From Hemiscyllium ocellatum (lineage: Eukaryota): 64,000 nt of DNA. The stretch is from the NCBI RefSeq assembly GCF_020745735.1, contig NC_083417.1, forward strand, positions 64,294,001 to 64,358,000. The letters run 5' to 3'. This document shows, in pieces, positions 14,802 through 63,224 of the stretch. A program made the translations under genes and the position numbers. Within the stretch, counting starts at the first letter, position 1; every line of letters starts with the position of its first letter. The notes below the pieces were generated by a model that was not told where the DNA came from, did no database searches, and saw nothing but the letters and a program-made list of their open reading frames with translations.

Positions 14802-14857
14802 CTGTGCAAATAATATCCCTGAGAATCAAGCATCGGAAAACCAATCGAGCTTTTCAT
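14802..14857 (-). pseudogene. Pseudogene paralog exon 1 (leader)
   Basis: agaATGAAAAGCTCG..TTGATTCT..ACAG aligns with the intact leader. It is 56 nt (+1 frameshift) and the donor is mutated to ATAAAT. The downstream intron is 154 nt versus 159 nt in the intact gene. Confidence 0.7.
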
Positions 14858-14923
14858 TCTGAACACTAAATTTAATTGATACCTGTCAACACGAGCTGCG
14901 AGACTGCAACATTGAAAGATAAC

Positions 14924-14964
14924 TTCCGGTTAGAGTTCCATCGCTTGTGAGGCTTATGACGTTT
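14924..14964 (-). promoter_or_regulatory. Promoter remnant of the pseudogene (ETS plus CRE-like)
   Basis: TTCCGGTT starts at 14924, 67 nt from the ATG as in the intact gene. ATGACGTTT is at 14956-14964. Confidence 0.45.
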
Positions 14965-40726: not shown

Positions 40727-41224
40727 GAATGAGAGAGAGTAGCCAAGCAGGCTAAGATAAAAGGTAGGGAGGAGGGACTTGGGGGAGGGGCGATGGAGGT
40801 GAGATAGGTGGAAGGAGGTCAAGGTGAGCGTGATAGGCCAGAGTGGGGTGGGGGCGGAGAGGTCAGGAAGAAGATTGCTGGTTTGGAGGGCGGTGCTGTG
40901 TTGAGGGAACCGACTGAGACAAGGTGGGGGGAGGGGCAATGAGGAAACTGGATTCAGATTTCTCCAGTTTCCTCATTATGAATTCAGATTTCTCCAGTTT
41001 CCTCATTTCCAGAAGGCAGCCTTCTTTGGGATTATGGCACTTCTCCGGTTTCATTGGACTACTCAACGTTAGTGCAATATATGTCACCTTATTAGCGACA
41101 GCGTCTTGTGCGACCTGTAAAGGCAGCATTTAGAAATATTGTTGAAATAATATGGAACAGGATGTCTGCAAAGTGGTCATCAGAAGGACGTGGAAATGAT
41201 TTTCTGTATCTCACATGATCAATG

Positions 41225-41413
41225 TCAACTGAGGCAAAAAGCCTTCACTGACATCCTGAATCTCGATTTCACCTTAATAATGTAAATTCTTCTTTGTTTA
41301 TTCAGTTTTACCTCAGCGTATGTGCTTCTCTCTACTTCAAATATACGTCTTGGAGTTCTCTTGCCTCTGCTGAATTCTACCGCAGTGTATTGCACACCCT
41401 CCGACTGTGCTTC
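41225..41413 (-). CDS. IgSF receptor gene exon 6: cytoplasmic tail with ITIM (VQYTAV) and ITIM/ITSM-like motif (STYAEV)
   Basis: Acceptor tgtccctcgcAG|GAA, phase 0. Translation EAQSEGVQYTAVEFSRGKRTPRRIFEVERSTYAEVK.. runs to TGA at 41225-41227. Confidence 0.8.
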   Translation of the reverse strand, partial: EAQSEGVQYTAVEFSRGKRTPRRIFEVERSTYAEVKLNKQRRIYIIKVKSRFRMSVKAFCLS

Positions 41414-41917
41414 CTGCGAGGGACAGATGCAAAATAGTTCATTAAGTCCCTATTGCATGCCTTCAACAATTCGTTCGCCAAGCAGGGAACAAATGTATCC
41501 TTGGCCCGACATCACTTGCAGAATCCACGTTTCAGATATATTCACGTGATTACAAACATTACTGCATTGTGGGCAATTTTACAAGCTAAACTTTTCTTCA
41601 CGTGCATTTCGTAACACAATGTTTCAATGTCAAAAAGTGTCGGCATTGGAGAGGATTCATTTTCAATCGAAATAATGACTGAAAGTGTAAAGTGTTATGA
41701 GCTGGAAACATTCTCATAAATATGACCAGATTTTAAAAATCCAATTAACACTATTTATCAAAAAGAGCATTGCACCAACTGTATTTCAAAAGTCGTTGAG
41801 TGAGCATATACTTCAATAAGTAACCTTAAAGCGTTCAGAAGTGATTAGCATATTTCTGTCATTATTGTATGTTTCCCGGATTTGCAAATCCCGATGGTGA
41901 TGAAGGCATGAACTCAC

Positions 41918-41961
41918 CACCTTGTCAAGACGATCCGGTTGCCTTGTGCATTCTCCATCAT
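41918..41961 (-). CDS. IgSF receptor gene exon 5: short cytoplasmic exon (NDGECTRQPDRLDKV)
   Basis: Acceptor ggtattcAG, donor GGTG|GTGAGT, 44 nt, phase 1-0. The frame fits the flanking exons, and a homologous CTDQPQR exon is present in the pseudogene. Confidence 0.75.
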
Positions 41962-42193
41962 CTGAATACCAATGAAATATAATTACACTGTGAGATGGAA
42001 TTATTAACTCAGTTTCTGTATGGAAAATGAAGCGTCACATTTCTGAATCAAAGCGATAGAAAAAGACTGTCAATGTTCAGTTGATACACAACAATAATGA
42101 AGAAGGGAGAATATGACATGGTCAACATCAGTTTCTAATCTTCCCGTTCTTAAAGGAAGAATCATTACTCGGAAGAATAATCACATTGCCAGC

Positions 42194-42369
42194 TTCATTT
42201 CTGGCAGGGTACAATTCATGAGTTATGTTCAAAAGTGACGTTTTCTTTGGAAACTAATACTCCTGAGAAATATTAACATTCTAATGAATTGTACCCTGCC
42301 AGAAATGAATCTTGTAATGTTCAAAAGTGACGTTTTTCCTTGGAAATTAATACTCCTGAGAATTATTAA
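42194..42369. repeat. Interleaved 26-bp perfect inverted repeat and about 52-bp direct repeat
   Basis: Inverted repeat 42194-42219 / 42284-42309. Direct repeat 42225-42276 / 42317-42369. Confidence 0.85.
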
Positions 42370-42493
42370 TAGTCTAACAACAAAATTATTACTATTTCTG
42401 CGTTATGAAATTGGTCTGAAACAATTACGTTTCCACCGTTAAATCATTTGGCTTTCTCCGGAACATGCTAATTCTCCTTCAACCCCTTTTTTA

Positions 42494-42800
42494 GATTAGA
42501 TTAGATTAAAGTGTGGAAACAGGCCCTTCGGCCTAACAAGTCCACACTGACGTGCCGAAACGCAACACACCCATACCCCTATATTTACCCCTTACCTAAC
42601 ACTACGGGCAATTTATCATGGCCAATTCACCTGACCCGCACATCTTTGGACGGTGGGAGGAAACCGGAGCACCCAGAGGAAACCCACACAGATACGGGGA
42701 GAACGTGCAAACTCCACACAGTCAGTCGCCTGAGTCGGGAAATGAACCGGGTCTCAGGCGCTGTGAGGCAGCAGTGCTAACCACTGTGCCACCGTGCCGC
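42494..42800 (-). mobile_element. HE1-like V-SINE in intron 4 of the IgSF gene
   Basis: tRNA head near 42800, V-domain, and a (TCTAA)n tail at 42494-42509. Confidence 0.88.
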
Positions 42801-42859
42801 CCTTTATTATTCTCAGATGTCAACTGGATGGATAATTAAGAGTTGACAGTATTTCTTAC

Positions 42860-42973
42860 TTCTGTTAGATCGAAGTCCATGTCGCTTTACAATTATGGTC
42901 ACAAGCACGAGAAACGAAAATCCAAGTGCCGCACAAATTGGAGTCCAAAAGATGAGTGAACTGTTGATACTGT
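42860..42973 (-). CDS. IgSF receptor gene exon 4: transmembrane exon (SINSSLIFWTPICAALGFSFLVLVTIIVKRHGLRSNR)
   Basis: Acceptor aattttgcAG, donor AGAA|GTAAGA, 114 nt, phase 1-1. About 23 hydrophobic residues with no charged residue, followed by a KRH stop-transfer. Confidence 0.85.
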
Positions 42974-43933
42974 CTGCAAAATTAAGAGGACATTAATTGC
43001 TGGTGGTGCTTGGATAGGAACTACTAAGAACTGTAAGAGCCGCATTATTGAAGGGCAGTGAAAAAGCAGAAGTGCCAAGAATTCTTTCAGTTGAATGTCG
43101 AAGTCACTTCCATTTCCAATAGATGGCAAATTTGGAATTAGTTTCTGGAATGGATTGTTGGTTTGTACATCACAAAGGACTGTTTTGCAAAGGTAAGGAC
43201 ACAAAACTGGGCGATTACCCTTGGACTAAAATACTGTTCTTGACTTTATTACGGATTAACACACGTTTTCTTGAAATTAGAGTCATGACTTCACAAGCAT
43301 TTCCTTCGCTGGTCACATCAAATTCTAAAATGGGGCGATCGGATTATGAACCTTTTGCAAATAAGTGAACTGTCTTTTTGATATTCATTTTATAAAAAGA
43401 CATCTACTGCTTTGTAAAATGTCGTTTTAAGACAGGACAATATATTGTCAAAGTTAATGCATTAACTTTGCCGCACCATAGACAAGTCTCGTCTTCACAT
43501 AAGCTTTGTGTTAAGTGTGAGCGCGATCCCGATTAAACATGCCATGGATAGTTGAGAGATAATACAGTACTTGGTAAGGGATGACTTCAAAATTCTGCCC
43601 TGGACACAACCAATGGGGAATGCAGGTTGGGCGAAACCAAACAAAACAAAGACCACCCTGCAACAGTATAGGGAAAGTAGGCAGTCGACAGGAATGAAGG
43701 ATTTTTACACGTAAACAAAACTGATGAATGAGATGAAGGCAGAAACGGATAGAATAGCTCATGTCTCAACATTATTACTACGACAAAAATAAAGGAAATA
43801 GAATTCAAATAAGGTTTTGTTGCTTTCAACACAAATGCCAACTGAATGTAAGGAATTAAAATATGGCATTTACCACGAAAACACTGCAGATTAGCTCCAT
43901 AATATGCATACATTATGCGATGCATTTCGTTAC

Positions 43934-44278
43934 ATACTATAACAATCGTTAACCCGCTTTGTTGGTCTCCAGAAAGTGTGAAAATAGTGTGGACGACGAC
44001 AGCAGGAGTCTTTAGGGAGACGTGAGATACTGAACAGGTATAAATGGTATGACTCGAAGGAGGTTGAGACACAACCAAAGAACTGGATACTTCATACAGC
44101 CCCTCGCCGTTCTGCACCTTATTAGTATTTATTCCGACTGTAGTTTCGGAGCCGTTTATGTACCAGGCGAGAGTGAAATCGTCCGGATAAAATGGAACTG
44201 TTTCACACAGAAGGGTCAAAGAAACTGGTGAAGTTTCTTTATCTAACTTGGGCGTAATTTTCAGTGGTACTGGGGAAA
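43934..44278 (-). CDS. IgSF receptor gene exon 3: Ig C1-set domain (3' splice donor uncertain)
   Basis: Acceptor ttcatgcAG|TT at 44278, phase 1. Translation ..LTLLCETVPFYPDDFTLAWYING..GLYEVSSSLVV..YTCSVSHVSL shows C1-set hallmarks (CxxxxFYP, W, YxCxVxH). In-frame phase-1 GT donors exist at 43933 and 43873. Confidence 0.88.
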
Positions 44279-45277
44279 CTGCATGAAGAGAATTGAAAAA
44301 GCCATGTTATTGGACAAAACCGGAGAATGTTAAATTTGAGAATGTTTTTCAACCGCTCTGTTTTATCACAATCTCAGCATTCAAAGACGCAGCTTATTGT
44401 TTACGTAACTTTATATGCAAGCTTTCGAACTGTGGCATTTATTCACCTTTACTTGAAGTATCAGCTCCAATTCTTGCTTTTTTCTCAGCAGAAGATAGCT
44501 TCAAGTTGTTCAGAAATGTTTGTCTCTAGCATTTGAATAAATTAATTCAATTGAACCAGGGCAGTGGAAAGGACAAAGAAAGTAATGTTCATCGGCCCTT
44601 TTGCTTTGACTCTCACATGAAGAGTAACGATGAAATTGCTGCTTGTCGTTCAAATGACGATTATTACGTTAGCCAAATTTCAAAACCAAAGTTTTGAAAA
44701 TTCAAGAAATATATTAAATCTGTTGAATCCCAGGAGCTACAGATTATCTGTATTGTTTTAGATACTGATTGGGGGGCACTGATTCTACTGCGTTGTATGC
44801 TTCAAAATATGACTTCTTTTGAATTGCTCCCGTTCATCAGTAAGTAACTTCACTCTGATTTTCAAAACATGACGCGAAAATTATGTAAGAGCAAATTTCG
44901 GTATGCTTTAACTTCAGAAGGAGTAATTGGGGATAGTCAGGACATCAATGTCACACCACAGACTAGCTGGATTGTTGTGCTCGCATTGACATAATTTGCT
45001 TGTTGTCGAGTATATGCATCGGAAATTCTGCTGGTAAACACCTGGTATTTAAGGTGCCTTTGGAATGATGATGGTTAATAGTCATAAAAGTTTCGGTTTT
45101 CTGCCTGTGATATTGATTGTCCAATTACAATACTTTCAAGACAAACGAATTACTAAGTGGAGGCCGCTGCTCAAATGATCAGTCCCCATGATTAAACTGC
45201 ACACGTTCATGAAATAAGCGATCAGAAAATATCTTGTTACTTCGAAATATTTCACACAGTATCACGCTCTCAATTAC

Positions 45278-45592
45278 CGTGCACAAATAAATGAGAACCA
45301 GTTCCATTTATTTGACCTATTCCTTCATAAATCACACCGCAGTGGTAGACTCCAGAATATTGAATGGTAACGCTCAGCAAGTTACAGAAAGCTGATGTTC
45401 CATTGGCAGCACCAACTCGTTTTCTGAAACACTTCTGAAAATCATCATTTCCAACCTGCTTCCACCAAATAAGCTTTGGTTCTGAACCGGGCCAAGAGCT
45501 GGGGAATCTGCATTCGAATGGAACATCCTCCCCTTGGTTCACAGTTATTTCTTTGGGCGTTTGAGTAACACTGAGCGAAGTGTGATCCGCAG
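45278..45592 (-). CDS. IgSF receptor gene exon 2: VJ-type Ig V-set domain
   Basis: Acceptor tttctaacAG|CT, donor CACG|GTAATT, 315 nt, phase 1-1. Translation ADHTSLSVTQTPKEITVNQGEDVPFEC..LIWWKQ..SGVYHC..INGTGSHLFVH has the B-strand Cys, C-strand Trp, F-strand YxC and a J-like GxG(S/T)xLxV in the same exon. Confidence 0.92.
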
Positions 45593-45751
45593 CTGTTAGA
45601 AACAAAGTAAGATAAAGATAACTGTCGTATCAAGATAGAAGAATTCAATAGTTCAACAGAGAGATGCATTAATATTCTATAAAAGAACGAGGAGCTGCTT
45701 CAAAAGCATTTAATTAATTAAAGCAGATCTTTCAATTAAATAATCAAGTAC

Positions 45752-45806
45752 CGGTAAGAATAGATTCAAGTAGAATCAAACAGAGAAAATTCATCCTCAC
45801 GGTCAT
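45752..45806 (-). CDS. IgSF receptor gene exon 1: signal peptide MTVRMNFLCLILLESILT(A)
   Basis: ATG at 45806. 55-nt exon ending in phase 1 at ACCG|GTACTT. Hydrophobic leader that joins in frame to the V exon across a 159-nt intron. Confidence 0.8.
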
Positions 45807-45872
45807 TCTAAGAAATGGATTCAACTGACGACTCTATCCAGTTAGTGCGAGTTGGTAACTGCTGAGATCCGT

Positions 45873-45912
45873 TTCCGGTTTGTTTTCTGCGATGTATGTC
45901 GCAATGACGTTT
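45873..45912 (-). promoter_or_regulatory. Proximal promoter module: ETS-type site (ACCGGAAA) plus CRE-like TGACGT
   Basis: TTCCGGTT starts at 45873, 67 nt from the ATG, and ATGACGTTT is at 45904-45912. Both motifs recur at near-identical spacing upstream of the pseudogene. Confidence 0.5.
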
Positions 45913-46034
45913 AACATTCTGAGAGTGCAGTTGTTATTTTGAGCCTCATATGTTCAACGTTACTCTGTAGTTTCTGTGTTTATTTCACGTCTGAAATCAC
46001 ATGTACCACTGGAAGCAAAGTTTCGGAAAAGTCA

Positions 46035-46044
46035 TTTCATTTTC
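46035..46044 (-). promoter_or_regulatory. IRF-E/ISRE-like motif GAAAATGAAA
   Basis: Matches GAAANNGAAA about 230 nt upstream of the ATG. Motif match only. Confidence 0.25.
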
Positions 46045-49000
46045 AAATGCGAAGTTTACTCACACTGCTGATGTTCATACTATTTCTAACCACGAGCTGA
46101 TCTGACTCCATCGTTCTCCTGGTCAGTGTGTCCAGATCTTAACCACAATTTTGGGCACATGGCATTTGTTTTGACTTTTACCATAATGGAAGACTGTGGT
46201 TCTTCTCACTTCTTTAATGTTGTCAGTAGGCTCTAATCCATTCCCTTCGGAGTTCTTACAATATGAACAAGTGCATCAAATCTCCTCTCAACTTTCTCTT
46301 CATAAATGGAGATTGCCCAAGTTTCTGCACTAAACTCCGTCCTCCGTCCATGTAATCAGGCATGTTTTGTGTCAGTCATCTCTCAGTGAGTTGGGATGTC
46401 CTTCCTGTGCTAGAATATTCTGGGTGCAAATTACACTTCAAGAAGAGAACACAAAAACCAAGACAGTCAGTAATGGAACATAAAGCAATGGCAGGGGTGC
46501 CGCCTTTCAAATGGATGTTAAATAAACCTTGCAGATCTTTTTTACAAAGAAGTGCTCTGGAATTATTGGTGTTCTTGCCAATATTTGCGCTTCTTTCAGG
46601 ATAAAAACGTAGATTTTTTTTAAACGGATTGCCGTTTGCCGAGGTTGGCAGGGTATGATGTCTGCTACTTTTTTTTCATGACAATGAATGCACTTGTAAA
46701 ATAATTCATTGAGTGCAACGTGGTGTCAGATTTACAGCCGCCCTACAAAAAGTATGAAATGAACGCTTTGATTCTTTCTTACAACTTGTTTCAACTCAAT
46801 TTCAACATGTATTCATACCGTTCCGGACGGGCAAACCCCAGAAATCAATGCAATGCAACAGGTCAGTCCGAGCCGTGTTTCGCAAATCTGCACCAGAATT
46901 TCTTTGCCTTAGTAGAATATGATCATACTTATAATGGCAAGGACTGGGGAAGAATTATTCATTATTTGCTCTACTTCCTTTGTCACTTTCACCATTCTTG
47001 TGCACAAATATGCCTGGTCCCTCTACTCTGGAACTCAAAGTAAGACTGATCCTTTCATTTGATATTGTCTGCTCGTGTTTTTCGCTGGTTGCTATCTTTG
47101 CTACAAGTGCAGCAACTTCGATTTGACTCTGTGCGCATTAGGTTTGATATCTGCCTTGCTTCCTGAGACATGATGAAAATGTTTTCGAAGTACCATGTAT
47201 CAGAACATCCACATTCTCTATTATTTAGGAAAATCATAATCAAGTTAGTGAGACATGCTTTGCCTTTCGGAAATGCGGATTGATTCCAGACAGGGGCAGG
47301 AGTTGGCCATTTGGCCCCTCAAACCTGCTCCAATGTTTAATATGGTCATGGCTAATCATCCAACTCACACCCTGTTTTTGCTTTCTCCCCACACCCTTTG
47401 ATCTCTTTATCTCTCAGAACAGGATCAAACTCCTTCATGAAAACATTCAACCGCTTTCTGTGACAAAGAATTAATTTGTTTTTTTTATGACAGAGGACGG
47501 AAAGAGAGCAGTAAAGAGAAAACCAAGTGGTGACATGCGACAAAGGTTGTCGAGGTAATAGGGAAAAGGAAGACCAAGATGCAGCAGCACATTGCAAGTT
47601 GAGCGCACAAACAACTGTATCAACTTTGACAAGCTGTGTTGAGTCAAATACGGGTTGTTGTCAGTTTGGATGTTCACTTATTTGAAATAATCGCTAAATT
47701 ATGAACCCATGAAGGCAAGTGAATCCAATTTGAATACTGCCTGACTCTCACACACCCACCATAGTAAAACGCTTGCCAGTACTAAATTGGCTACTCATGT
47801 GTGAGTTTAAATTATATTGTGACTTCAAGTTGATGGTCCATTCACTCCTTTCATTCTTTTTGACTTGAGATAGGAACGCTGACTTTTTAGCTATATTGTA
47901 TCACTATTTTCTTGGACGTATTCTTGTTTTCCATTTTTTTCTTCAACGTATCTGCCAATTTTATTTTTCAAGGATTTCGTTCATTGGGGTTAGGAAGTTG
48001 CTGTTAGATCATATTATATCTTAAACTGTCTCAGTTGGCCAGATTTACTCCATTCAGCTCCAGCCCGTGGGCATGCTTTTCACTTGTGATTTTTGTTTGG
48101 AAGTTGGTAACACCATTTCGGTATTACACATGGGCCACATCCAGACATTTACAAACTTCTCTTTGGAATTTGAAACTTCATGCTCCATGAACCAAATGAC
48201 TTGCACCAGAATTAGTGTTTTTCATGGCATCAAAATTCATAGAAACGTTCAAAACTTTAATTGTTCTACCAGTGCCTGTGCAAAGCAGTTTGAATGTCCA
48301 GTTCACCTTATGCCACTTCATTTCTCTTGTTAACTTCTCAATTGATGTGTTAATACCTCCGCATTATTTTCCTCCTAATGGATAAGACGAGCCTTTCCAA
48401 AGTTAAACCTTTCCTTACTGGATTTCATGACCATGATTCCCCCATTTTCTGCAACTGCCATATATTCATGTTACGTCAGTATTTGATATCACTCTTATGA
48501 AATACTTTTTGCCACTTTTCTTCAAGCTCAAAACATTATGTTACAATTCCCTTTGCATCTTCTTTCCGGCTTCCACTCCATTCATCCCACACTCTATCAC
48601 AAGCTTATGTAAGAACATAAAACATGGGAGCAGAATTAAACCATTGAAAAGATAAACGTCAACTTCGTTGTTCTGCCTTTTTCCTACATGTGTTGATACA
48701 CTTACTGATTTTCAAACCTGCCCATATCAGTTTTGAATCTGCTTCAGCAATTGTCTGGCATACAAGTCCAAGGATTCATACCAACCAGGAGAAGAAATTC
48801 ACCCTAATCTCAGTCTTAAGTGAGCATCCCTTTACTCTGAGATTATGCCCACTGGCACCATATTCTCTCAAGATATGAAACAGCATCACAGGATGTACCC
48901 TGTAAAGTTCCTAAAGAATCATTCGTTATCATAAGGTGTTCTTCCAACTTCCAAAGAGTGAGTAGGGTCTGTACTCAATCCCCCCTCATAATATAGTCCC

Positions 49001-49544
49001 TCCAAACCTCGAATCATGATGGACAACCTTGACTGATTGCCTCAACGTGGCAAATCCTTCCCTAGATCAGGAGACCAAAACTGTTCACGGTCTTCCAGCT
49101 ATTGTTTAACTCTTGCTTTAATATTTTTAGCATGAACTCCTTCTTCTTCATATTTCATTCCCTAGAACGTTGCTGTGTATTCTCTCTTGTTCAAGCAGGT
49201 TTAACTGTCACTCAATCTTAACTGACTCCAATATCTCCACTGGAATAACAGTTCTTTCTTGTATTCTAGAAAGCCCAAATGCGGGCCGAGCAAATCAATT
49301 ATCTTTGTCTTCCTGGCGCTGGAGGGAAATACATTTGCTAATTCTATCAGGCTGTCTTTTGTTATCTCTAGAAAATTTGTCAAGGATTTCTCTGCTTACA
49401 AAGCCATCTTATTATCGAATGCTCAGGCTGGTATCTGCCCTTGATGACTTACCCTATCTCCACATGCAATGTTACATTATCATCATCCAAAGTATGCTAG
49501 TGGGAAGCCCCCAGACCTTTGTCACAGCTGAACAGGAAAAAGTG

Positions 49545-52225
49545 CCAATTTCGACAGCATTAGGCAAGAGCTTTCAAAAGCTGATCAGGGCAAAATTGTT
49601 GACAGGTAAAAGGATGGCTCGAAAATGAGAAGCCTTCAGACATGAGATAATGAGAGTCCAGAGAAAGTACATTTCTATTAGGATGAAAGGATAGAGTGGT
49701 AGGTACAGGGAATGCTGATGACTAAAGAAATTGAAGGTTTGGTGAAAAAAGAGAAGGAAACATATGTCAGGTATAGACAGGATCGATCGAGTGAACCCTT
49801 AGAAGACAGTAGGAGTATAGTTAAGAGGGTAACCAGGAGTGCAAAAAGGGGACATGAGATCGCTTTGGCAAATAAAGTTAAAGAGAATCCAAAGCGTTTT
49901 TACAAATACGTTAAGGACAAAGGGGTAACTCGGGAGAGAATAGGGCCCCTCAAAAATCAGCAAGGCAGCCTTTGTGTGGAGCTGCAGAAAATGGGGGACA
50001 TAGCAAACGAGTATTCTGCATCAGTATTTATTGTGGAAAATGTCATGGAAGGTGTAGAATGTAAGGGAATAGATAGTGACAGTTTGAAAAAATGTCCATA
50101 TAACAGAGAAGGAAGTGTTGAAATGCGCAGATCTAACGAAATAGAGGGAGAACTAGCCAATTGCATACAGAACTGTCTCAAAGGTGGAAGACAGAGGGTG
50201 GGCTGTAGGGTTGTTTTTCATACTGGAAGCCTGTGACCAGTGGAGTGCCACAAGGATCAGTGCTGGGTACACTACTTTTTGTGATTTGGATGTGAGTATA
50301 AGAGGTACAGTTCGTAAGTTTGCAGATCACACCAAAATTGGAGGTGTAATTGACAACGAAGAAGGTTACCTCACATTACAACGGGATCTTGATCAGATGG
50401 GCCAATGGGCTGAGAAGTGGCAGATGGAGTTTAATTTAGATAAATGTGAGATGCTGCATTTGAGAAAGCAACTCTTAGCAGGAATTATACACTTAATGTT
50501 AAGGTCCTAGGGAATGTTGCTGAAAAAAGAGACCTTGAAGTGCAGATTCATAGCTCCTTGAAAGTGGAGTCACAGGAAAATAAGACTGTGAAGAGGGCGT
50601 TTGTTATGCGTCCCTTTGCTGGTCAGAGTATTGAGTACAGGATGGGAATTTGTGTTGCAGACATTTCGTCCTCTGTCTAGGTGACATCCTCAGTGCTCGG
50701 GAGCCTCCTGTGAAGCGCTTCTGTGATCTTTCCTCCAGCATTTGTCGTGGTTTGAATCTGTCGCTTCCGGTTGTCAGTTCCAGCTGTCTTCCTGTTTGTC
50801 CTATGTAGTGTTTTGTGCAGTGCATGCATGGGATTTTGTACACTACGTTGGTTTTGCTCCTGCTGGGTGTCGGGTCCTTTGTCCTGGTGAGTTGTTGTCT
50901 GAGAGTGGCTGTTGGCTTGTGTGCTGTTATGAGTCCTAGTGGTCGCAGTGGTCCGACTGTCAGTTTGGAAATGCTCTTGATGTATGGCAGTGTGGCTAGT
51001 CCTTTGGGTTGCAGCATGTCCTCGTTCCGTTGTCTTTTCCTTAGGCATCTATTAATGAAATTGTAGGGGTATCCGTTTTTGGTGATTACATTGTAGAGGT
51101 GTTCTTCTTCCTCTTTTTGCACTTCTGGTGTGCCGCAATGTGTTGTGGTCCTTTTGAACAGTGTTGTTGCCCTTTTGAACAGGACAAACAGGAAGATAGC
51201 TAACGATCCACAACCATGAACACCAACTGGCCACGAAACGACACGACCAGCTATCCTTATTAGCCACACGCTCAGATATCAAGCAACATGAATTCGACGG
51301 GGACAACACTACTATTATAGGACAAGCCAAACAGAACAGCCAGGGAATTCCTGGAGGCATGGCACTCATCCACGGATACAATCAATGAGCACATCGATCT
51401 GGACCCAATATACCGGCTACTGCAATGGACAGCTGGAACTGACACCCAGAAGCGACAGATTCAAACCACTACAAATGCCGGAAGAAAGATCACAGAAGCG
51501 CTTCACAGCAGGATCCCAAGCACTGAGGATGCCACCTACACAGGGTACGTGACGTCTGCAACACAAATTCCCAGCTCGGCGAACAGAACCACAACAATGA
51601 GCACCCGAGCTACAAATCTTCTCACAAACATTGAGTGCAGGAGTTGAGAGGTCATGTTTCGGCTTTACAGGACATTGGTTATGTCACTGTTGGAATATTG
51701 CGTATAATTCTGCTCTCCTTCCTATTGGAAAGATGTTTAGGAACTTGAAAGGGTTCAGAAAAGATATCCAAGGATTTGAGCTTTAGGGAGAGGCTGAACA
51801 GGCTCGGGAAGCTTTCCAGGTGCATCAGAGGCTGGGGGGTTGGGGGGGTGACCTTATAGAGATTCACAAAATCATCAGAGGAAAGGACAGGATAAGTAGA
51901 CAAAGTCTTTTCCCAGAAGTGGGAGTGTCCCGAACTAGAAGATATAGGTTTAGGATGAGAGAGAAAAGACATAAAAGAGACCTAAGGGACACCTTTTCCA
52001 TGCGAAGGGTGGTATGTGTAAGGACTCAGCTCCCAGAGGATGTCGTGGAGTTTGGTACAATTGCAACATTTAAAAGGCATTTGGATGGGTATATGAATAG
52101 GAAGGGTTTGGAGGGATATGGGCCAGGCGCTGGCAAGTGAGATTAGATTGAGTTGGGATATCCGGTCAGCGTGGATGGGTTGGACCGAAGGTCTGTTTCC
52201 ATGCTGTACATCTCTGTGACTCTAT
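49545..52225 (+). mobile_element. Degenerate CR1 (duplicate of 1530-3226) interrupted by a Penelope-like insertion
   Basis: KENPKRFYKY and FADH remnants, and the same internal deletion as the first copy. Confidence 0.88.
50643..51629. mobile_element. Penelope-like element, inverted (two-orientation) structure, 13-bp TSD
   Basis: Minus arm NGYPYNFINRCL..TLPYI..VVYKIPC..YIGQTGRQL. The plus arm restarts at GQTG. TSD ATTGAGT(A/G)CAGGA at 50630-50642 and 51630-51642. Confidence 0.88.
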
Positions 52226-53954
52226 CTGAATTTGTCTCTTTTGCAATGATGTAAAGAATACTTGTATATAATTTATCTTAGCAAAAAGGCATAAAGTGAT
52301 AATAACAAAATTTAATTAAGAAGATGGGCTCTTGGATAATTGACAAGTTAAAGAATCAGAAAAGAGACAGTGGGAGGTAATAACTTCCAAATTCCATAAT
52401 CCTTAAGAGCTAATTAGAAATTGAGTTTGCATCCATAGAGATAAGAAACATGAAAGGTAGAAGGAGCAGTCGGCAATTTGACTCCTGGAATCTGCAACAT
52501 CATTCAATTTTATCATGACTCGTCCCTTGATCCTTCCCTCCCCTCCATCCCTTGATCCCCTTAATCACAAGGGCTATGTCTAATTCCTTCTTGAAAATGC
52601 ATGATGTTTTCACCTGGAGCATTTTCTGTGGTCGCAAATTCCACAGGGTCAACACTCTCCGGGTGAACAAATTTAACTTCATCTCAGTTATTTCTACTCA
52701 ACTCATGTTTGTCTATTCTCATCGCTTAGGGCAATTTGTAATAGGTCTTGCTCATCCGAGGCCAATAAGAAAATAGCGATGGAATTGAGCATGCTGTATG
52801 TTTTATTTGTGGCTTGGAAACAGTTTAAAAAACTAGAGCTTTTGAAGTAAAGGCACGCATGAGGGTTTCATATTATGCTGCTTCTAGTTGGACATGACAT
52901 GTTCATAAGGTATTGGAGAGAAACTGAGAAACAAGTGTCAACCTGCAGCATAAGCAGAATCAGATATCAAGAGCCAAAATATCTGTGAAGTCACTGTCCT
53001 GCTTTAAAAGGTAATATTTATAACCTGAGCAAAGTTACCTGAGTTATTGCACAAAACTGTCTCTTGTTTCCTTGTTTGAGTGGAAGACTCCGAAACTTGC
53101 AAAACACCTGCCAGTGGGATACAGTTTCAGAAGTTTACGTTAACACAGGTTCAGGGGGAGCACTTCAGTGGTCAAGGACATTCAACCTCGGATCTTCAGG
53201 TTGAACATCCTCCTAGGCAGACTTCAGGACACAGGAGAATACAGAGTTGCCGAATAGAGGCTGATAATCATGTTCTATGAGGGCAGCCGCAACCCGGACA
53301 TTACGTTCATGTCATACTACAGATGACCCAACCACACTATACACATATTGATATGCACCGGCACATGTACACACATACCCTCACACAAATACGGACCCTA
53401 TCTCATACACACAACACATTCACACTCACGCTCTCTCATACGCACACACTCCTTCACACTCACTCACACTCTCTCAAGCACATGCAAACTCATATGCATG
53501 CTCTCACAAACATATACTTCCACACAGTTACACACACTTACTGTCTCAAGCAACACATTCTCTGAAGAGCATGTGCACACACACACAAACACACCACACT
53601 CGCTCCATCAAACATGCCCTCTCATACATAAGTTCTCTCTCTCTCTCTCTCTCTCTTTCCGTGTCTCTCTCTCTCTCTCCCACACATACACATGCACACA
53701 CAAATATATAGATCTATGGGGTGAAGTTGCATTTGCAGACTTGTATTTGCAGATGCATTCTATTTTGTTCAAAAACCACACAATGACGGAGTCAGGAATG
53801 TTGATGAGGGCAGAGCGGTAGACCTCATCCATATGGATTTCAGTAAGGCCTTTGATAAGATTCCAAATAGAACATAGAACATAGAACATAGAAAGATACA
53901 GCGCAGTACAGGCCGTTCGGCCCTCGATGTTGCGCCGACCGAATCCTACCTAAC

Positions 53955-56858
53955 CTACACTAGCCCAATAACTTCCAAATGCCTATCCAATGCCCGGTTA
54001 AATGACCATAAAGAAGGAGAGTTCACCACTGCTACTGGCAGGGCATTCCATGAACTCACAACCCGCTGTGTAAAGAATCTACCCCTAACATCTGTCCTAT
54101 ACCTACCACCCCTTAATTTAAAGCTGTGTCCCCTAGTAACACCTGACTCCATTAGCGGTAAAAGGTTCTCAGTGTCGACCCTATCTAAACCCCTAATCAT
54201 CTTATACACCTCTATCAAATCTCCCCTAAACCTTCTCTTCTCCAATGAGAACAGCCCCAAGTGCCTCAGCCTTTCCTCATAAGATTTTCCTACCATTCCA
54301 GGCAACATCCTGGTAAACCTCCTCTGCACTCGTTCCAATGCCTCCACATCCTTCCTATAGTATGGCGACCAAAACTGCACACAATACTCCAGATGAGGCC
54401 GCACCAGAGTCTTATACAGTTGCAACATGACCTCAGGACTCCGGAACTCAATTCCTCTACCAATAAAGCCCAGTACACCATATGCCTTCCTCACAGCACT
54501 ATTTACCTGGGTGGCAACTTTCAGAGATCTGTGTACATGGACACCAAGATCCCTCTGCTCATCCACACTACCAAGTAGCCTACCATTAGCCCAGTAATCC
54601 ATCTTCTTGTTACTCCTACCAAAGTGAATGACTTCACAATTAGTTACATTGAATTCCATTTGCCACATTTCTGCCCAGCTCTGCAACTTATCTATATCCC
54701 GCTGTAACCTACCACTTCCTTCCTCACTATCCACAACTCCACCGACTTTTGTGTCATCCGCAAACTTGCTTACCCAGCTTTCAAGCCCTTCCTCTAGATC
54801 ATTTATAAAGATAACAAAAAGCAATGGTCCCAAAACATATCCTTGTGGTACACCGCTAGTAACTGCACTCCAAGATGAACATAGTCCATCAACTACTACC
54901 CTCTGTCTACTTCCAGCCAGCCAATTCCTAATCCAAACCTCTAATGCATCCTCAATGCCATACCTCCGTAGTTTTAGCATTAGCCTACCATGGGGAACCT
55001 TATCGAACGCCTTACTAAAATCCATATACACAACATCTACTGCTTTACCCTCGTCCACTTCCTTAGTCACCTTCTCAAAGAACTCAATAAGGTTTGTGAG
55101 GCACGACCTGCCCTTCACAAAACCATGCTGGCTATCCTTGATCACGTTATTCCTATCCAGATGTTCATAAATCTTATCCCTTACCATTCTCTCTAAGACT
55201 TTGCCCACCACTGAAGTCAGACTCACAGGCCTATAGTTACTAGGGCTATCCCTACTCCCTTTCTTGAACAAGGGGACCACATTCGCTATCCTCCAGTCCT
55301 CTGGTACTATTCCCGTTGACAATGACGACATAAAAATCCAGGCCAATGGCTCTGCTATCTCCTCCCTAGCTTCCCATAGGATCTTAGGGTAAATGCCATC
55401 AGGCCCAGGAGACTTATCTATTTTCATCCTCTCCAATATTTCCAGAACCTCTTCCCTGCATATTTCCAGGCCATCCATTCTAATCATTTGTGACTCCATA
55501 TTCACATCAGCAACAGTGTCCTGTTCCTGAGTGAATACTGATGAAAAGTATTGATTTAGTGTCTCTCCAATCTCCTCCGCCTCCACACACAACTTCCCAC
55601 TACTATCCTTGACTGGACCGATACCTACCCTAGTCATCCTTTTATTCCTGACATACCTATAGAAAGCCTTTGGGTTTTCCCTAATCCTACCAGCTAAAGA
55701 CTTTTCATGTCCCCTTCTCGCTTCTCTTAGCTCTCTCTTTAGATTCTTCCTGGCTACCTTATAACTCTCTATCGCCCCAACTGAACCTTCACGCCTCATC
55801 TTTACATATGCCGCCTTCTTCCCTTTCACAAGGGATTCCAATTCCTTACTAAACCACGGCTGCCTCACAAGGCCCTTTACACCATGCCTGACTGGTACAT
55901 ACTTATCGAGGACACGTAGTAGATGCTCCTTGAACAATCCCCACATCTCATTAGTGTTCTTCTCTTGAAGCCTGTTTTTCCAATCCACACATCCTAAGTC
56001 ATGCTTCACTGCATCATAATTTCCCTGCCCCCAGCTATAACTCTTGCCCTGCAGCGCACACTTATCCCTCTCCATCACTAAAGTAAAAGTCACCGAGTTG
56101 TGGTCACTGTCCCCGAAGTGCTCACCAACCTCCAAATCTAACACCTGGCCTGGTTCATTACCTAGAACCAAATCCAGTATAGCCTCACCTCTTGTTGGCC
56201 TGTCTACATATTGTGTCAGGAAACACTCCTGCACACATTGGACAAACACCGACCCATCTAATGAACTCGAGCTATAGCTCTCCCAGTCAATATCTGGGAA
56301 GTTAAAGTCCCCCATAACAACCACCCTGCTACCTTCACTCTTTTCCTGAATCATCCTCGCAATATTATCCTCTACTTCTCTAGGACTATTAGGAGGCCTG
56401 TAGAAAACACCTAACAGGGTGACCTTACCTTTCCTATTTCTAACCTCAGCCCAAACTACCTCAGATGGCAAGTCCTCTTCCATCGTCCATTCCACTGCTG
56501 TGATACTATCTTTGACAAGTAATGCCACGCCTCCCCCTTTTTTACCCCCATGTCTGATTCTACTAAAACATTTGAACCCTGGAACGTGCAACAGCCATTC
56601 TTGTCCCTGTTCTACCCACGTCTCTGTAATGGCCACAGCATCGAAGTCCCAGGTACCAACCCACGCTGCAAGTTCACCTACCTTATTTCTTATACATCTG
56701 GCATTGAAGTATACACACTTCAATCCACCCTTCTGTTTACAGGCACCCTCCTTCGAGATCGCTGCATTATTCATAACCTCCCTACACTCAAGGTCCTGTA
56801 CACTAAAGCTACAGTCCAGGTTCCCATGCCCCTGCAGAGTTAGTTTAAACCCTCCCAA
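53955..56858 (-). CDS. CR1 ORF2p: APE endonuclease plus reverse transcriptase
   Basis: 967-codon open frame with APE motifs (YFNAR, ITETW, YRPP, GDFN, SDH) and RT motifs (NYRPVSL, DFSKAFD, GVPQG, FADD). The first in-frame ATG is at 56774. Confidence 0.96.
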   Translation of the reverse strand: MGGFKLTLQGHGNLDCSFSVQDLECREVMNNAAISKEGACKQKGGLKCVYFNARCIRNKVGELAAWVGTWDFDAVAITETWVEQGQEWLLHVPGFKCFSRIRHGGKKGGGVALLVKDSITAVEWTMEEDLPSEVVWAEVRNRKGKVTLLGVFYRPPNSPREVEDNIARMIQEKSEGSRVVVMGDFNFPDIDWESYSSSSLDGSVFVQCVQECFLTQYVDRPTRGEAILDLVLGNEPGQVLDLEVGEHFGDSDHNSVTFTLVMERDKCALQGKSYSWGQGNYDAVKHDLGCVDWKNRLQEKNTNEMWGLFKEHLLRVLDKYVPVRHGVKGLVRQPWFSKELESLVKGKKAAYVKMRREGSVGAIESYKVARKNLKRELREARRGHEKSLAGRIRENPKAFYRYVRNKRMTRVGIGPVKDSSGKLCVEAEEIGETLNQYFSSVFTQEQDTVADVNMESQMIRMDGLEICREEVLEILERMKIDKSPGPDGIYPKILWEAREEIAEPLAWIFMSSLSTGIVPEDWRIANVVPLFKKGSRDSPSNYRPVSLTSVVGKVLERMVRDKIYEHLDRNNVIKDSQHGFVKGRSCLTNLIEFFEKVTKEVDEGKAVDVVYMDFSKAFDKVPHGRLMLKLRRYGIEDALEVWIRNWLAGSRQRVVVDGLCSSWSAVTSGVPQGYVLGPLLFVIFINDLEEGLESWVSKFADDTKVGGVVDSEEGSGRLQRDIDKLQSWAEMWQMEFNVTNCEVIHFGRSNKKMDYWANGRLLGSVDEQRDLGVHVHRSLKVATQVNSAVRKAYGVLGFIGRGIEFRSPEVMLQLYKTLVRPHLEYCVQFWSPYYRKDVEALERVQRRFTRMLPGMVGKSYEERLRHLGLFSLEKRRFRGDLIEVYKMIRGLDRVDTENLLPLMESGVTRGHSFKLRGGRYRTDVRGRFFTQRVVSSWNALPVAVVNSPSLWSFNRALDRHLEVIGLV

Positions 56859-57766
56859 AGAGCACTAGCAAACCTCCCCCCAAGGATACTGGTGCCCCTC
56901 AGGTTCAGGTGTAGACCATCCTTTTTATAGAGGTCCCACCTTCCCCAGAAAGAACCCCAGTTGTCCAGAAACCTGAATCCCTCCCTCCTGCACCATCCCT
57001 GTAGCCACGCATTTAACTGCTCTCTCTCCCTATTCCTCGACTCTCTATCACGTGGCACGGGTAACAAACCAGAGACTACAACTCTGTTTGTTCTAACTCT
57101 GAGCTTCCAACCTAGCTCCCTGAAAGCCTGTCTGACATCCTCACCCCTCTTCCTACCTATATCGTTGGTGCCAACGTGGACCACGATCTGGGGCTGCTCC
57201 CCCTCCCCCATAAGGACCCGGAAAACACGATCAGCGACATCACGTACCCTTGCACCTGGGAGGCAACATACCAAACGTGAGTCACTGTCGCCCCCACAAA
57301 ACCGTCTGTCTGTACCCCTCACTATCGAGTCCCCAAGAAATATCGCTCTACCTTTCTCAACCCTTCCCTTCTGAGCAACGGGGCCAGGCTCCGTGCCAGA
57401 GGCCTGAACCTCGTTGCTTGCCCCTGGTAAGTCATCCCCCCCACAAGTATCCAAAACGGTATACTTGTTCTTGAGGGGAATGACCGTAGGGGGTCCCTGC
57501 ACTGGCTTCCTCCTCCCACTCACCCTCACTGTCACCCATCGATCTTGAACTTTCGGAGTAACTACTTCCCTGAAGCTCTGATCTATGACCCTCTCTGCCT
57601 CCCGAATGATCCGCAGTTCATCCATATCCAGCTCCAGTTCCCTAACACGGGCTTGGAGGAGCTGGAGATGGGTGCACTTCTTGCAAGTGTACTCAGCAGG
57701 GACGCTATTGGCTTCCCTCACCTCATACATGTTGCAAGAGGAACATTGCACTGCCTGCACTGCCAT
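56840..57766 (-). CDS. CR1 ORF1p: N-terminal CxxC..CxxC zinc finger, coiled coil, SGNH esterase domain
   Basis: 308-aa ORF with CSSC/CKKC, the heptad LQARVRELEL and SGNH motifs GDS, GTND, DGLH. Confidence 0.93.
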   Translation of the reverse strand: MAVQAVQCSSCNMYEVREANSVPAEYTCKKCTHLQLLQARVRELELDMDELRIIREAERVIDQSFREVVTPKVQDRWVTVRVSGRRKPVQGPPTVIPLKNKYTVLDTCGGDDLPGASNEVQASGTEPGPVAQKGRVEKGRAIFLGDSIVRGTDRRFCGGDSDSRLVCCLPGARVRDVADRVFRVLMGEGEQPQIVVHVGTNDIGRKRGEDVRQAFRELGWKLRVRTNRVVVSGLLPVPRDRESRNREREQLNAWLQGWCRREGFRFLDNWGSFWGRWDLYKKDGLHLNLRGTSILGGRFASALWEGLN

Positions 57767-62955: not shown

Positions 62956-63224
62956 CTGCAGTGAGCTAGGAAAGGTGAACAGATAAACCTGGTGTTACTT
63001 AGGCTAGGTTGCATCTCAACCAAAGAGTTGGAAACTCCATACAGCCCATTGGGGTTCTTCGCATTAGTTGTACATATCACTATTGCGTTCTCAATGTCAT
63101 TTTTGTATCAGGTGATCGTGAGTTCCGACGGATGAAATTAAGCTGTTTCACATGCGAGAATCAGAGACAACAGTGGGATTCATTTCAAGTGGCCTGCAGG
63201 CAATCTACATTGAGCTTGGGGTCG
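62956..63224 (-). pseudogene. Second copy of the pseudogene C1 exon (3'-truncated)
   Basis: Same acceptor and the same ACC TGA stop as 13050-13352. Translation ..KNPNGLYGVSNSLVEMQPSLSNTRFICS retains the second Cys and has an extra stop and a frameshift. Confidence 0.85.

What the first reader, a model, noticed from the sequence alone, without database searches (positions are those of the whole stretch)
41225..45806. Apparently intact non-rearranging antigen-receptor-like gene: leader-VJ-C1-TM-ITIM/ITSM
Seen: six minus-strand exons with GT-AG boundaries and compatible phases (1,1,1,1,0), giving about 353 aa with the 43933 donor. V and J-like (GTGSHLFV) segments sit in one exon. They are followed by one C1-set domain, an uncharged TM and two tyrosine motifs (VQYTAV, STYAEV). 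Established: C1-set domains are largely confined to Ig, TCR, MHC, tapasin, SIRP and B7H6-type proteins. VJ-type V domains occur in NKp30/NCR3, SIRP and NITR. Germline VJ-C1 genes are discussed as models of the pre-RAG antigen receptor ancestor. Inference: this is a shark inhibitory receptor with a TCR/Ig-light-chain-like ectodomain. It may be an undescribed family, or related to PRARP/SIRP/NCR3-like genes. The ORF track shows only fragments of it.
Basis: partly seen in the sequence, partly recalled or inferred. Interest (0 to 1): 0.88.

Follow-up and report, generated by a model that had tools for sequence, protein, structure and literature searches.

The report
Shark SIRP-like inhibitory V-C1 receptor gene
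This is a real, apparently intact shark gene for a cell-surface receptor with an antibody-like outer part and an inhibitory tail; it belongs to a large receptor family found in all sharks, rays and chimaeras, which databases name inconsistently and no paper I could search describes.

Summary
Six minus-strand exons (45806-41225) join through GT-AG sites with phases 1,1,1,1,0 into a 353-aa type I membrane protein. It has a split leader, a V-set domain with a fused J-like strand, one C1-set domain, an uncharged TM and two ITIM-type tyrosine motifs.

I add a seventh exon (41114-40863). It is homologous to the tails of relatives and carries a third ITIM (VTYIAL), giving a 408-aa alternative product.

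The gene is not one of a kind. It belongs to a family with at least 60 clusters (50% identity) at E<=1e-30. All members whose source I looked up are chondrichthyan, from about 19 species. RefSeq names them inconsistently: SIRP-alpha-like, SIRP-beta-like, tapasin-related-like, MHC II beta-like, Ig lambda-like.

The family has inhibitory forms (uncharged TM, 1-4 ITIM/ITSM) and activating-type forms (Arg in the TM, short tail). SIRP is the nearest known family in architecture, but orthology is not shown.

Against its Chiloscyllium ortholog the V exon has dN/dS about 2.8.

Cautions:
- There is no expression evidence.
- A near-invariant Asp in the V domain is replaced (D78Y).
- No matching annotated protein was found.

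The scan's first readers flagged similar genes in several other windows of this genome. Verdict: a new member of a known kind, of moderate interest.

The parts
45752..45806 (-). Exon 1: start codon (ATG 45806-45804) and most of the signal peptide. This is the split leader, ending in phase 1.
   Evidence: The leader is 61% identical to Stegostoma copies at the colinear position. It fits the family leader pattern.
45278..45592 (-). Exon 2: end of the leader plus a V-set domain with a fused J-like G strand (NGTGSHLFV). Phase 1 to 1.
   Evidence: Pfam V-set E 1.1e-8. Family alignment A2 shows Q10, C27, W42 and C84 invariant and present here, but D78Y at a 44/45 conserved Asp. AlphaFold model pLDDT 86.6. 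Foldseek matches CD8 beta, CD79b, TCR V, NCR3, vNAR, PD-1 and SIRP-alpha d1. No RSS.
43934..44278 (-). Exon 3: C1-set domain plus membrane-proximal stalk. Phase 1 to 1, with the donor GT at 43933-43932.
   Evidence: Pfam C1-set E 6e-12. PDB sequence hits are IgA1 CH, UrIg2 (9dmx) at 2.8e-15 and MHC II beta2. The model has pLDDT 85.5 with a D strand. Foldseek gives MHC II beta2 at 28-32% identity. Identity to Stegostoma is 73%. The donor position is colinear with the Stegostoma exon end.
42860..42973 (-). Exon 4: end of the stalk, an uncharged transmembrane helix and a basic stop-transfer stretch (KRHGLRSNR). Phase 1 to 1.
   Evidence: mean hydropathy 2.2 over 21 residues, no core charge. It is homologous to the TM of Heterodontus and Mustelus relatives. 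The colinear Stegostoma exon carries an Arg instead.
41918..41961 (-). Exon 5: short cytoplasmic exon (DGECTRQPDRLDKV). Phase 1 to 0.
   Evidence: The colinear Stegostoma exon has ECTRQSD and intact splice sites.
41312..41413 (-). Exon 6: cytoplasmic exon with ITIM-type motifs VQYTAV and STYAE(V).
   Evidence: It is homologous to the tails of Heptranchias relatives (E 1e-5).
40863..41114 (-). It encodes AQDAVANK-VTYIAL (a third ITIM). The family's fourth motif (TEYAEI) has degenerated here to EGCLLE. An in-frame 30-nt tandem duplication lies at 41006-40947. The stop is at 40865-40863. The product is then 408 aa.
   Evidence: tblastn of family tails matches here: Callorhinchus P0026 at E 0.002, P0016 at 0.004, and Heptranchias P0191 at 0.012.

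Best explanation
The locus encodes an inhibitory-type member of a multigene family of non-rearranging V(J)-C1 immunoglobulin-superfamily receptors found across cartilaginous fishes. The family resembles SIRPs in architecture. What the sequence shows: a signal peptide on a split leader, one V domain whose J-like strand is encoded in the same exon, one C1-set domain, a short stalk, an uncharged TM helix, and a tail with two ITIM-type tyrosines (three if exon 7 is used). What I infer: the V domain binds a ligand at the cell surface. Src-family kinases then phosphorylate the ITIM tyrosines, which lie 23 residues apart. The tandem SH2 domains of SHP-1/SHP-2 dock on them and dampen activation of the leukocyte that carries the receptor. 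Relatives with an Arg in the TM and a short tail would signal the opposite way through an acidic-TM adaptor. That would make a paired inhibitory/activating system like SIRP-alpha/beta, KIR or NITR. The excess of amino-acid changes in the V exon suggests a rapidly changing ligand, either from a pathogen or a polymorphic self molecule.
For: - Gene model and domains.
- Full-length homology to annotated shark proteins with the same layout: Heterodontus P0189 48% over 319 aa at E 1.5e-98; Heptranchias P0003 47% over 328 aa.
- Family size and spread: 60 representatives at E<=1e-30. All 30 whose source I looked up or already knew are chondrichthyan, and so are the 32 word-search hits at E<=1e-10.
- Two tail/TM classes in the family. 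Inhibitory examples: Mustelus LIYSRV+TEYAQL and Callorhinchus VSYATL+TEYAQL. Activating-type examples carry Arg in the TM with tails of 5-40 residues.
- The four Stegostoma copies have colinear exons, but with an Arg in the TM and a frameshifted tail without tyrosines.
- In the tree the gene sits with Stegostoma (SH-aLRT 100), inside a shark subgroup with Heptranchias, Heterodontus, Mustelus and Scyliorhinus (SH-aLRT 91).
- The orthologous Chiloscyllium punctatum contig is 90.5% identical over 1.1 kb. The V exon has 3.5 synonymous against 32.5 non-synonymous differences, dN/dS 2.8. The non-synonymous rate exceeds the non-coding rate at p 0.02.
Against: - There is no transcript or protein evidence.
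- No matching protein turned up in three searches, although Hemiscyllium ocellatum RefSeq proteins are in the database. The gene may be unannotated, or called a pseudogene.
- Tyr replaces an Asp conserved in 44 of 45 relatives, including the Chiloscyllium ortholog.
- The family's fourth tail motif is lost and exon 7 runs on into unrelated sequence.
- Two decayed paralogues lie in the same window.
- The dN/dS test rests on 36 differences and is only marginally significant.
- ITIM function, the ligand and the cell type are all inferred.
Confidence: 0.7

Rival explanations
1. The copy is a recently silenced or unexpressed pseudogene in a birth-and-death cluster. It still looks intact but no longer makes a working receptor.
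For: - D78Y at a near-invariant V-domain Asp.
- Loss of the fourth tail motif, and a 30-nt duplication in exon 7.
- No matching annotated protein was found.
- Decayed copies lie at 9.7-14.9 kb and 62.9-64 kb of the same window.
- An excess of replacement changes is also expected in part from relaxed constraint.
Against: - All seven exons are open and all splice sites are canonical.
- All other invariant Ig residues are kept.
- dN/dS is well above 1 rather than near 1, and dN exceeds the non-coding divergence.
Confidence: 0.2
2. It is a true ortholog of tetrapod SIRP-alpha, the CD47 receptor, so the family is simply the shark SIRP family.
For: - The most frequent automatic RefSeq name is 'tyrosine-protein phosphatase non-receptor type substrate 1-like'.
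- Pig SIRP-beta is hit colinearly over V+C1 at E 3.6e-16.
- hhalign of the V profile against the SIRP V domain gives 2e-9. The C1 profile against SIRP d2 gives 1-3e-12.
- Both families have paired inhibitory and activating forms.
- From my memory only: SIRP-alpha's tail alternates xTYADL and TEYASI-type motifs, much like the family's LTYAxL and TEYAxL.
Against: - There is one C1 domain, not two.
- The C1 profile matches an Ig lambda C domain equally well (2e-12). The V profile matches a turtle 4xV receptor better (5e-12) and IgNAR V nearly as well (5e-8).
- In the Foldseek search SIRP-alpha d1 ranks 42nd, behind vNAR, TCR V, CD79b and PD-1.
- No bony-vertebrate protein appears among the family-level hits.
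- Synteny was not obtained.
Confidence: 0.15
3. It is a direct relic of the non-rearranging VJ-C1 precursor of Ig and TCR, in the sense proposed for UrIg/UrIg2.
For: - V and J are in one exon, followed by a C1 domain, with the split leader typical of antigen-receptor genes (leader point from PMC12227049).
- The C1 domain hits UrIg2 (9dmx) at 2.8e-15.
- The V fold is nearest to vNAR and TCR V.
Against: - The same V architecture is shared by CD79, CD8, NKp30, SIRP, NITR and PRARP (PMC11599192).
- Similarity to Ig domains is not higher than to SIRP.
- The ITIM tail and the lineage-specific expansions fit an innate paired-receptor family.
- Earlier notes of this scan place the MHC-type genes on other pieces of the assembly (unchecked).
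Confidence: 0.08
4. The main product is a secreted V-C1 protein, made by reading through the C1-exon donor as in the Stegostoma gene models. The TM and tail exons would then be unused.
For: The RefSeq models of the closest relatives (Stegostoma, 247 and 276 aa) end a few codons after the C1 exon. The C1 donor here (TAT|gtaacg) lacks the +5 G.
Against: Read-through here stays open for about 125 further codons of unrelated sequence instead of ending quickly. The TM and tail exons are intact and conserved with Heptranchias, Heterodontus and Mustelus full-length models. In Stegostoma the donor itself has changed.
Confidence: 0.07

Closest known systems
SIRP family (SIRP-alpha/beta/gamma; PTPNS1)
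   Same: Both have an N-terminal V domain with a J-like strand followed by C1-set domain(s). Both have an uncharged TM with a multi-ITIM tail in the inhibitory member, and paired members with a basic TM residue and short tail. Profile similarity covers both domains. This is the name that automatic annotation gives most often.
   Different: This gene has one C1 domain rather than two. Identity is only 22-27%. The match to SIRP is no better than to Ig lambda C or IgNAR V. The family forms large tandem clusters, and every member I looked up is from a cartilaginous fish. Orthology, synteny and CD47 binding are untested.
UrIg and UrIg2 (elasmobranch non-rearranging VJ-C1 genes; PMC12227049)
   Same: Both are non-rearranging, with V and J in one exon, a split leader and C1-type constant domains, and both occur in elasmobranchs. 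The C1 domain here hits the UrIg2 crystal structure chain at 2.8e-15.
   Different: UrIg has three C domains and is secreted. UrIg2 has 9-11 C domains plus a TM. Neither is described with an ITIM tail. A multi-C1 'titin-like' Carcharodon protein, which I only guess to be UrIg2-like, shows no V match to this family's profile and C1 matches at 3e-10.
NKp30 / NCR3
   Same: Both have a VJ-type V domain with a G-strand GxG motif followed by an N-glycosylation sequon. NCR3 is among the best structural matches, at 23-24% identity.
   Different: Mammalian NCR3 has no C1 domain and has a basic TM residue (established knowledge).
Teleost NITR, and mammalian KIR/LILR-type paired receptors
   Same: They share the same logic: multigene tandem clusters, inhibitory ITIM forms alongside activating forms with a charged TM, and fast-evolving ligand-binding domains.
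   Different: NITRs have V or V-I ectodomains without C1 and are confined to bony fish. KIR and LILR use C2/I-type domains. These statements rest on established knowledge and were not tested here.
Ig light chains and TCR chains
   Same: They share the V-C1 ectodomain plan and fold.
   Different: There is no RSS and V and J are fused in the germline. The gene also has its own TM and a signalling tail.

Membership tests
Chondrichthyan V(J)-C1 receptor family (no curated name; RefSeq 'SIRP-alpha-like', 'tapasin-related-like' and others) | Colinear full-length similarity, from leader through V, C1 and TM to the tail, with annotated members | tested here: met
   E 1.5e-98 to Heterodontus P0189 and 7e-95 to Heptranchias P0003, over 319-328 aa. 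The gene nests within a shark subgroup in the tree.
Chondrichthyan V(J)-C1 receptor family (no curated name; RefSeq 'SIRP-alpha-like', 'tapasin-related-like' and others) | Family signature residues: V domain Q10, C27, W42-W-K, D78-x-G-x-Y-x-C84 and NGTGSxLxV; C1 domain FYP...W, GLYEVSS and YTCxVSH | tested here: met
   All are present except D78, which is Tyr here.
SIRP family | V-C1-C1 ectodomain (three Ig domains) | tested here: not met
   There is only one C1 exon between the V and TM exons. No further C1-like exon lies in the 41-46 kb interval.
SIRP family | Closer in sequence to SIRP than to other V-C1 families | tested here: inconclusive
   Family V profile: SIRP-beta V 2e-9, IgNAR V 5e-8, Ig lambda V 1.7e-6, turtle 4xV receptor 5e-12. 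Family C1 profile: SIRP d2 1-3e-12, Ig lambda C 2e-12. No curated NCR3, TCR or tapasin sequences were available.
SIRP family | Conserved synteny with the SIRP region; binding of CD47 | not tested
   The 10-kb flanks of the Callorhinchus and Stegostoma loci showed no other genes. Binding needs an experiment.
ITIM-bearing inhibitory receptors | Uncharged TM plus at least one cytoplasmic [SIVL]xYxx[ILV] motif | tested here: met
   VQYTAV and STYAEV, with VTYIAL in exon 7. The TM core carries no charge.
ITIM-bearing inhibitory receptors | Phosphotyrosine-dependent recruitment of SHP-1, SHP-2 or SHIP | not testable with these tools
   This needs biochemistry.
NCR3 / NKp30 | Single V domain without a C domain; basic residue in the TM; MHC class III location | tested here: not met
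   A C1 domain is present and the TM is uncharged. The location was not tested by me.
UrIg / UrIg2 | VJ domain followed by three or more C1-type domains; no ITIM tail described | tested here: not met
   There is one C1 domain and an ITIM tail. The family definition is from PMC12227049.
Rearranging antigen receptors (Ig, TCR) | V and J separated in the germline and flanked by recombination signal sequences | tested here: not met
   V and the J-like strand are contiguous in one exon. No heptamer-spacer-nonamer site occurs in 40800-46000 on either strand.
PRARP (Fu et al. 2019) | Sequence relationship to the chicken PRARP genes | not testable with these tools
   The paper is not held and no PRARP sequence was returned by any tool. 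No bird or teleost protein appears among the family-level hits.
C1-set Ig domain | Pfam C1-set above the gathering score; a seven-strand constant fold with a D strand | tested here: met
   46.2 bits against a cut-off of 21, while C2-set_2 at 19.4 is below its cut-off of 21. The model has strands A, B, C, C', D, E, F and G. Best structural matches are MHC II beta2 and Ig kappa C.

The most novel reading that the evidence does not exclude
The gene is one member of a family that has not been formally described. Under this reading the family is a cartilaginous-fish-wide, fast-evolving paired inhibitory/activating receptor system built on a germline VJ-C1 ectodomain. It would be the shark counterpart of KIR, NITR and SIRP systems. 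It could also be the closest living relative of the V-C1 stock from which SIRPs arose, and it would fill the largely empty picture of innate leukocyte receptors in sharks.
Probability: 0.35. Interest if true: 0.65.

Novelty: new member of a known kind. Interest (0 to 1): 0.45.

Why it matters
Little is known about innate leukocyte receptors of the KIR, LILR or NITR type in cartilaginous fishes. This gene shows that an epaulette-shark-like genome carries intact ITIM-bearing V(J)-C1 receptors. They belong to a family shared by sharks, rays and chimaeras, so the family is older than the split of those groups.

The family has the hallmarks of a paired receptor system: tandem clusters, inhibitory and activating-type forms, decaying copies, and an excess of amino-acid change in the V domain. 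Its inconsistent database names (SIRP, tapasin-related, MHC II beta, Ig lambda, TCR beta, CD276) hide that these proteins are one family. That can mislead gene-family counts in comparative genomics.

For the debate on antigen-receptor origins it adds another germline VJ-C1 lineage, but no specific link to Ig or TCR. This single gene is one of many, and the interest lies in the family.

Tried and rejected
- **PDB profile search.** A search with the V alignment was swamped by multi-domain Ig proteins such as titin and Robo, so it could not rank families.
- **Foldseek.** Searches with both domain models returned generic VJ-type V domains and MHC II/Ig C1 domains without a clear nearest family.
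- **Literature.** PRARP, NKp30 with shark, SIRP with cartilaginous fish, and non-rearranging with ITIM found no description of this family. Five key papers are not held: the UrIg paper of 2023, the Ohta and Flajnik review of 2015, the B7H6/NKp30 paper of 2012, the 'primordial immune complex' paper of 2019, and the PRARP paper of 2019.
- **Synteny.** The 10-kb flanks in Stegostoma and Callorhinchus showed no neighbouring genes.
- **SIRP-alpha tail.** No tool returned a SIRP-alpha tail sequence. The tail-motif resemblance to SIRP-alpha therefore rests on my memory alone.
- **RSS scan.** Negative.
- **Whole spliced protein.** It could not be given to the remote tools as one reference, so domains were searched exon by exon and the spliced model was used only in local scripts.
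- **Rejected: a chance ORF chain.** Homology at E about 1e-95 rules it out.
- **Rejected: a rearranging Ig/TCR segment.** V and J are fused and there is no RSS.
- **Rejected: NCR3 or UrIg membership.** The domain count and the tail do not fit.

Full report
**1. The observation**

I read 41000-46100 on the minus strand and spliced the six stated exons in a script. They join into 1062 nt with no internal stop, giving 353 aa. Every internal boundary is AG|exon|GT. The acceptors have pyrimidine-rich tracts, and the donors are gtactt, gtaatt, gtaacg, gtaaga and gtgagt.

- The mechanical ORF list shows the gene only as fragments.
- Pfam calls exon 2 a V-set domain (E 1.1e-8) and exon 3 a C1-set domain (E 6e-12, 46 bits against a cut-off of 21). 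C2-set_2 stays below its cut-off.
- The J-like strand NGTGSHLFV is the last part of the V exon.
- No heptamer-spacer-nonamer signal exists in 40800-46000 on either strand. The V domain is therefore germline-joined.
- The TM core has no charged residue.
- VQYTAV and STYAEV both fit the ITIM consensus.

**2. A correction to the 3' end**

Relatives with long tails continue after the second motif with a segment of the form ...K-LTYATL...TEYAxL.... In the window, the codons STYAE are followed by gtaaaa (donor at 41312). About 200 nt downstream an acceptor (ctttacag|GTC, exon start 41114) opens a frame. That frame supplies the Val of STYAEV and then AQDAVANK-VTYIAL.

tblastn of family tails hits exactly this stretch: Callorhinchus P0026 at E 0.002, P0016 at 0.004, and Heptranchias P0191 at 0.012.

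- The family's fourth motif (TEYAEI in P0026) aligns here with EGCLLE, so that tyrosine is lost.
- An in-frame 30-nt tandem duplication follows.
- The frame runs on to a stop at 40863.
- With exon 7 the product is 408 aa and has three ITIM-type motifs.
- Which end is used needs transcripts.

**3. What it belongs to**

- *Closest proteins.* A word-indexed search with the C1 part found two Stegostoma tigrinum proteins at 72-73% identity, automatically named 'H-2 class II beta chain-like'. They are encoded at least four times within 9.19-9.54 Mb of one chromosome.
- *Family size.* A profile of V+C1 scored against 1.84 billion representatives gave 882 hits, 60 of them at E<=1e-30. Most are 230-420 aa with one colinear V+C1 match.
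- *Taxa.* All 30 of those 60 representatives whose source I looked up or already knew are chondrichthyan, and so are the 32 word-search hits at E<=1e-10. The species are Callorhinchus, Heptranchias, Heterodontus, Scyliorhinus (two species), Mustelus, Stegostoma, Chiloscyllium (two species), Hemiscyllium, Rhincodon, Cetorhinus, Pristis, Amblyraja, Hypanus, Hemitrygon, Mobula (two species) and Narcine.
- *Names.* The automatic names disagree: SIRP-alpha-like (the commonest), SIRP-beta-1-like, SIRP-gamma-like, tapasin-related-like, MHC II beta-like, Ig lambda-like, TCR beta-like, CD276 homolog and NCR3 ligand-like. This shows that no curated family stands behind them.
- *Full-length matches.* The spliced model aligns over nearly its whole length with Heterodontus P0189 (48%, E 1.5e-98) and Heptranchias P0003 (47%, E 7e-95).
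- *Tree.* In a quick maximum-likelihood tree of the ectodomains, the gene groups with the Stegostoma copies (SH-aLRT 100). That pair sits inside a shark subgroup with Heptranchias, Heterodontus, Mustelus and Scyliorhinus (SH-aLRT 91). A separate, well conserved lineage with one sequence per shark species in this sample also exists.

**4. Two signalling classes**

I scanned the region after the C1 F strand in about 65 members.

- One class has an uncharged TM and a tail of 70-150 residues with one to four motifs. These are typically [LV]xYAx[LV] alternating with TEYAx[LIV].
- The other class has an Arg (rarely Lys) in the outer third of the TM and a short tail.
- The Stegostoma copies have colinear TM and tail exons with intact splice sites. 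Their TM carries an Arg, and a small indel shifts the frame of the exon-6 equivalent to an early stop, so neither tyrosine is kept.
- The gene in this window is of the inhibitory class.

This is the usual pattern of paired receptor families. Adaptor pairing and phosphatase recruitment are inferred, not shown.

**5. Comparison with known families**

*Sequence.* The C1 exon's best solved relatives are IgA1 CH, UrIg2 (9dmx, 2.8e-15) and MHC II beta2.

*Structure.* The AlphaFold models are confident, with pLDDT 86.6 and 85.5.

- The V model matches CD8 beta, CD79b, TCR V, NCR3, shark vNAR, PD-1 and, lower down, SIRP-alpha d1. That is essentially the published list of joined-VJ IgSF members (PMC11599192).
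- The C1 model matches MHC II beta2 at 28-32% identity, then B7H6 and Ig kappa C.

*Outside cartilaginous fishes.* The best hits are heterogeneous: a Xenopus B7H6-like V-C1 repeat protein, a turtle 4xV ITIM receptor, Ig lambda, and pig SIRP-beta at E 3.6e-16. An IgNAR-like sequence of unlisted source ranks with them.

*Profile comparisons*:

| Family profile | Target | E-value |
|---|---|---|
| V | turtle 4xV receptor | 5e-12 |
| V | pig SIRP-beta V | 2e-9 |
| V | IgNAR V | 5e-8 |
| V | Ig lambda V | 1.7e-6 |
| C1 | SIRP d2 | 1-3e-12 |
| C1 | Ig lambda C | 2e-12 |
| C1 | multi-C1 Carcharodon protein | 3e-10 |

SIRP is therefore the nearest known family in architecture, and marginally in sequence, but membership is not shown. 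There is one C1 domain instead of two, the sequence margin is not decisive, and synteny was not obtained.

UrIg and UrIg2 differ in domain number and lack an ITIM tail (PMC12227049). NCR3 lacks a C1 domain. PRARP could not be tested.

**6. Signs of selection and of decay**

A 1250-bp Chiloscyllium punctatum contig is 90.5% identical to 46300-45200 of the window. The match runs across the upstream region, leader, intron and V exon, so the contig is the ortholog.

- Within the V exon there are 3.5 synonymous and 32.5 non-synonymous differences. This gives dS 0.053, dN 0.147 and dN/dS 2.8.
- So few synonymous changes have a binomial probability of 0.03.
- The non-synonymous rate exceeds the flanking non-coding divergence (0.08) at p 0.02.
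- This suggests diversifying selection on the ligand-binding domain, but the counts are small.

Other signs point the opposite way.

- The window's copy has Tyr in place of an Asp kept in 44 of 45 relatives, including the ortholog.
- It has lost the fourth tail motif.
- It was not found as an annotated protein.
- Two decayed copies lie in the same window. They have V-like and C1-like exons with stops at 14592-14377, 13296-13114 and 63170-62976, and an exon-6 equivalent at 9784-9707 whose motif reads HCAAL in place of HYAAL.
- These decayed copies lie within a segmental duplication of about 50 kb at 85-88% identity.

**7. Context from the scan**

First readers flagged similar VJ-C1-ITIM genes 494 kb, 184 kb and 64 kb before this window and 73 kb after it, and on other pieces of the assembly. 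A follow-up note names the genome as the epaulette shark and places MHC-type and NKp30-type genes on other pieces.

I did not verify those notes. They agree with what I see in Stegostoma (at least four copies over 350 kb) and Callorhinchus (members spread over at least 370 kb).

**8. Verdict**

The gene is real, intact by sequence, and correctly read as a non-rearranging inhibitory-type V(J)-C1 receptor, with one extra exon. It is one member of a large, cartilaginous-fish-wide, SIRP-like paired receptor family. That family is already in public annotation, but I found no curated name and no description of it in the papers I could search. The interest lies in the family, not in this copy.

Noticed in passing
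window 9695-14857 (-): A decayed paralogue of the same gene. It has a V-like exon with stops (14592-14377) and a C1-like exon with two in-frame stops (13296-13114). Its exon-6 equivalent has the ITIM tyrosine replaced (HCAAL, 9784-9707).
   Followed up: partly
window 1516-14163 versus 49528-64000: A segmental duplication of about 50 kb at 83-88% identity, broken into blocks. The second copy also carries a C1-like exon with stops (63170-62976). The stretch 9619-13081 of copy 1 has no counterpart in copy 2.
   Followed up: partly
L002-L004 (Stegostoma CM060524.1, 9.29-9.54 Mb), locus coordinates 13700-15720: Three identical Stegostoma copies have unannotated colinear TM and tail exons, with an Arg in the TM and a frameshifted tail without tyrosines. 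The RefSeq models stop after the C1 exon and may miss an activating-type membrane form.
   Followed up: partly
window 53955-57766 (-): A LINE-like element with long open ORFs: ORF2 of 967 aa and an upstream ORF of 308 aa.
   Followed up: no
window 42500-42800 (-), intron 4 of the gene: An interspersed-repeat insertion (my guess: a tRNA-derived SINE) ending in a (TCTAA)n tail, inside the intron between the TM exon and exon 5.
   Followed up: no
window 40947-41006 (-): An in-frame 30-nt tandem duplication (MRKLEKSE twice) in the proposed exon 7, just after the degenerated fourth tail motif.
   Followed up: partly
proteins P0199, P0200, P0201, P0205, P0206, P0064: A distinct, well conserved subfamily with one sequence per shark species in this sample (Cetorhinus, Heterodontus, Rhincodon, Chiloscyllium, Hemiscyllium, Heptranchias). 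It has a PWWIY...CKFC transmembrane segment. It is about 30% identical to this gene and seems to evolve much more slowly than the rest of the family.
   Followed up: partly
proteins P0015, P0024, P0033, P0039, P0047, P0072: Family members share a transmembrane motif with an Arg near the outer end and IVDH at the inner end. Such a conserved charged pair might mark a particular adaptor partner.
   Followed up: no
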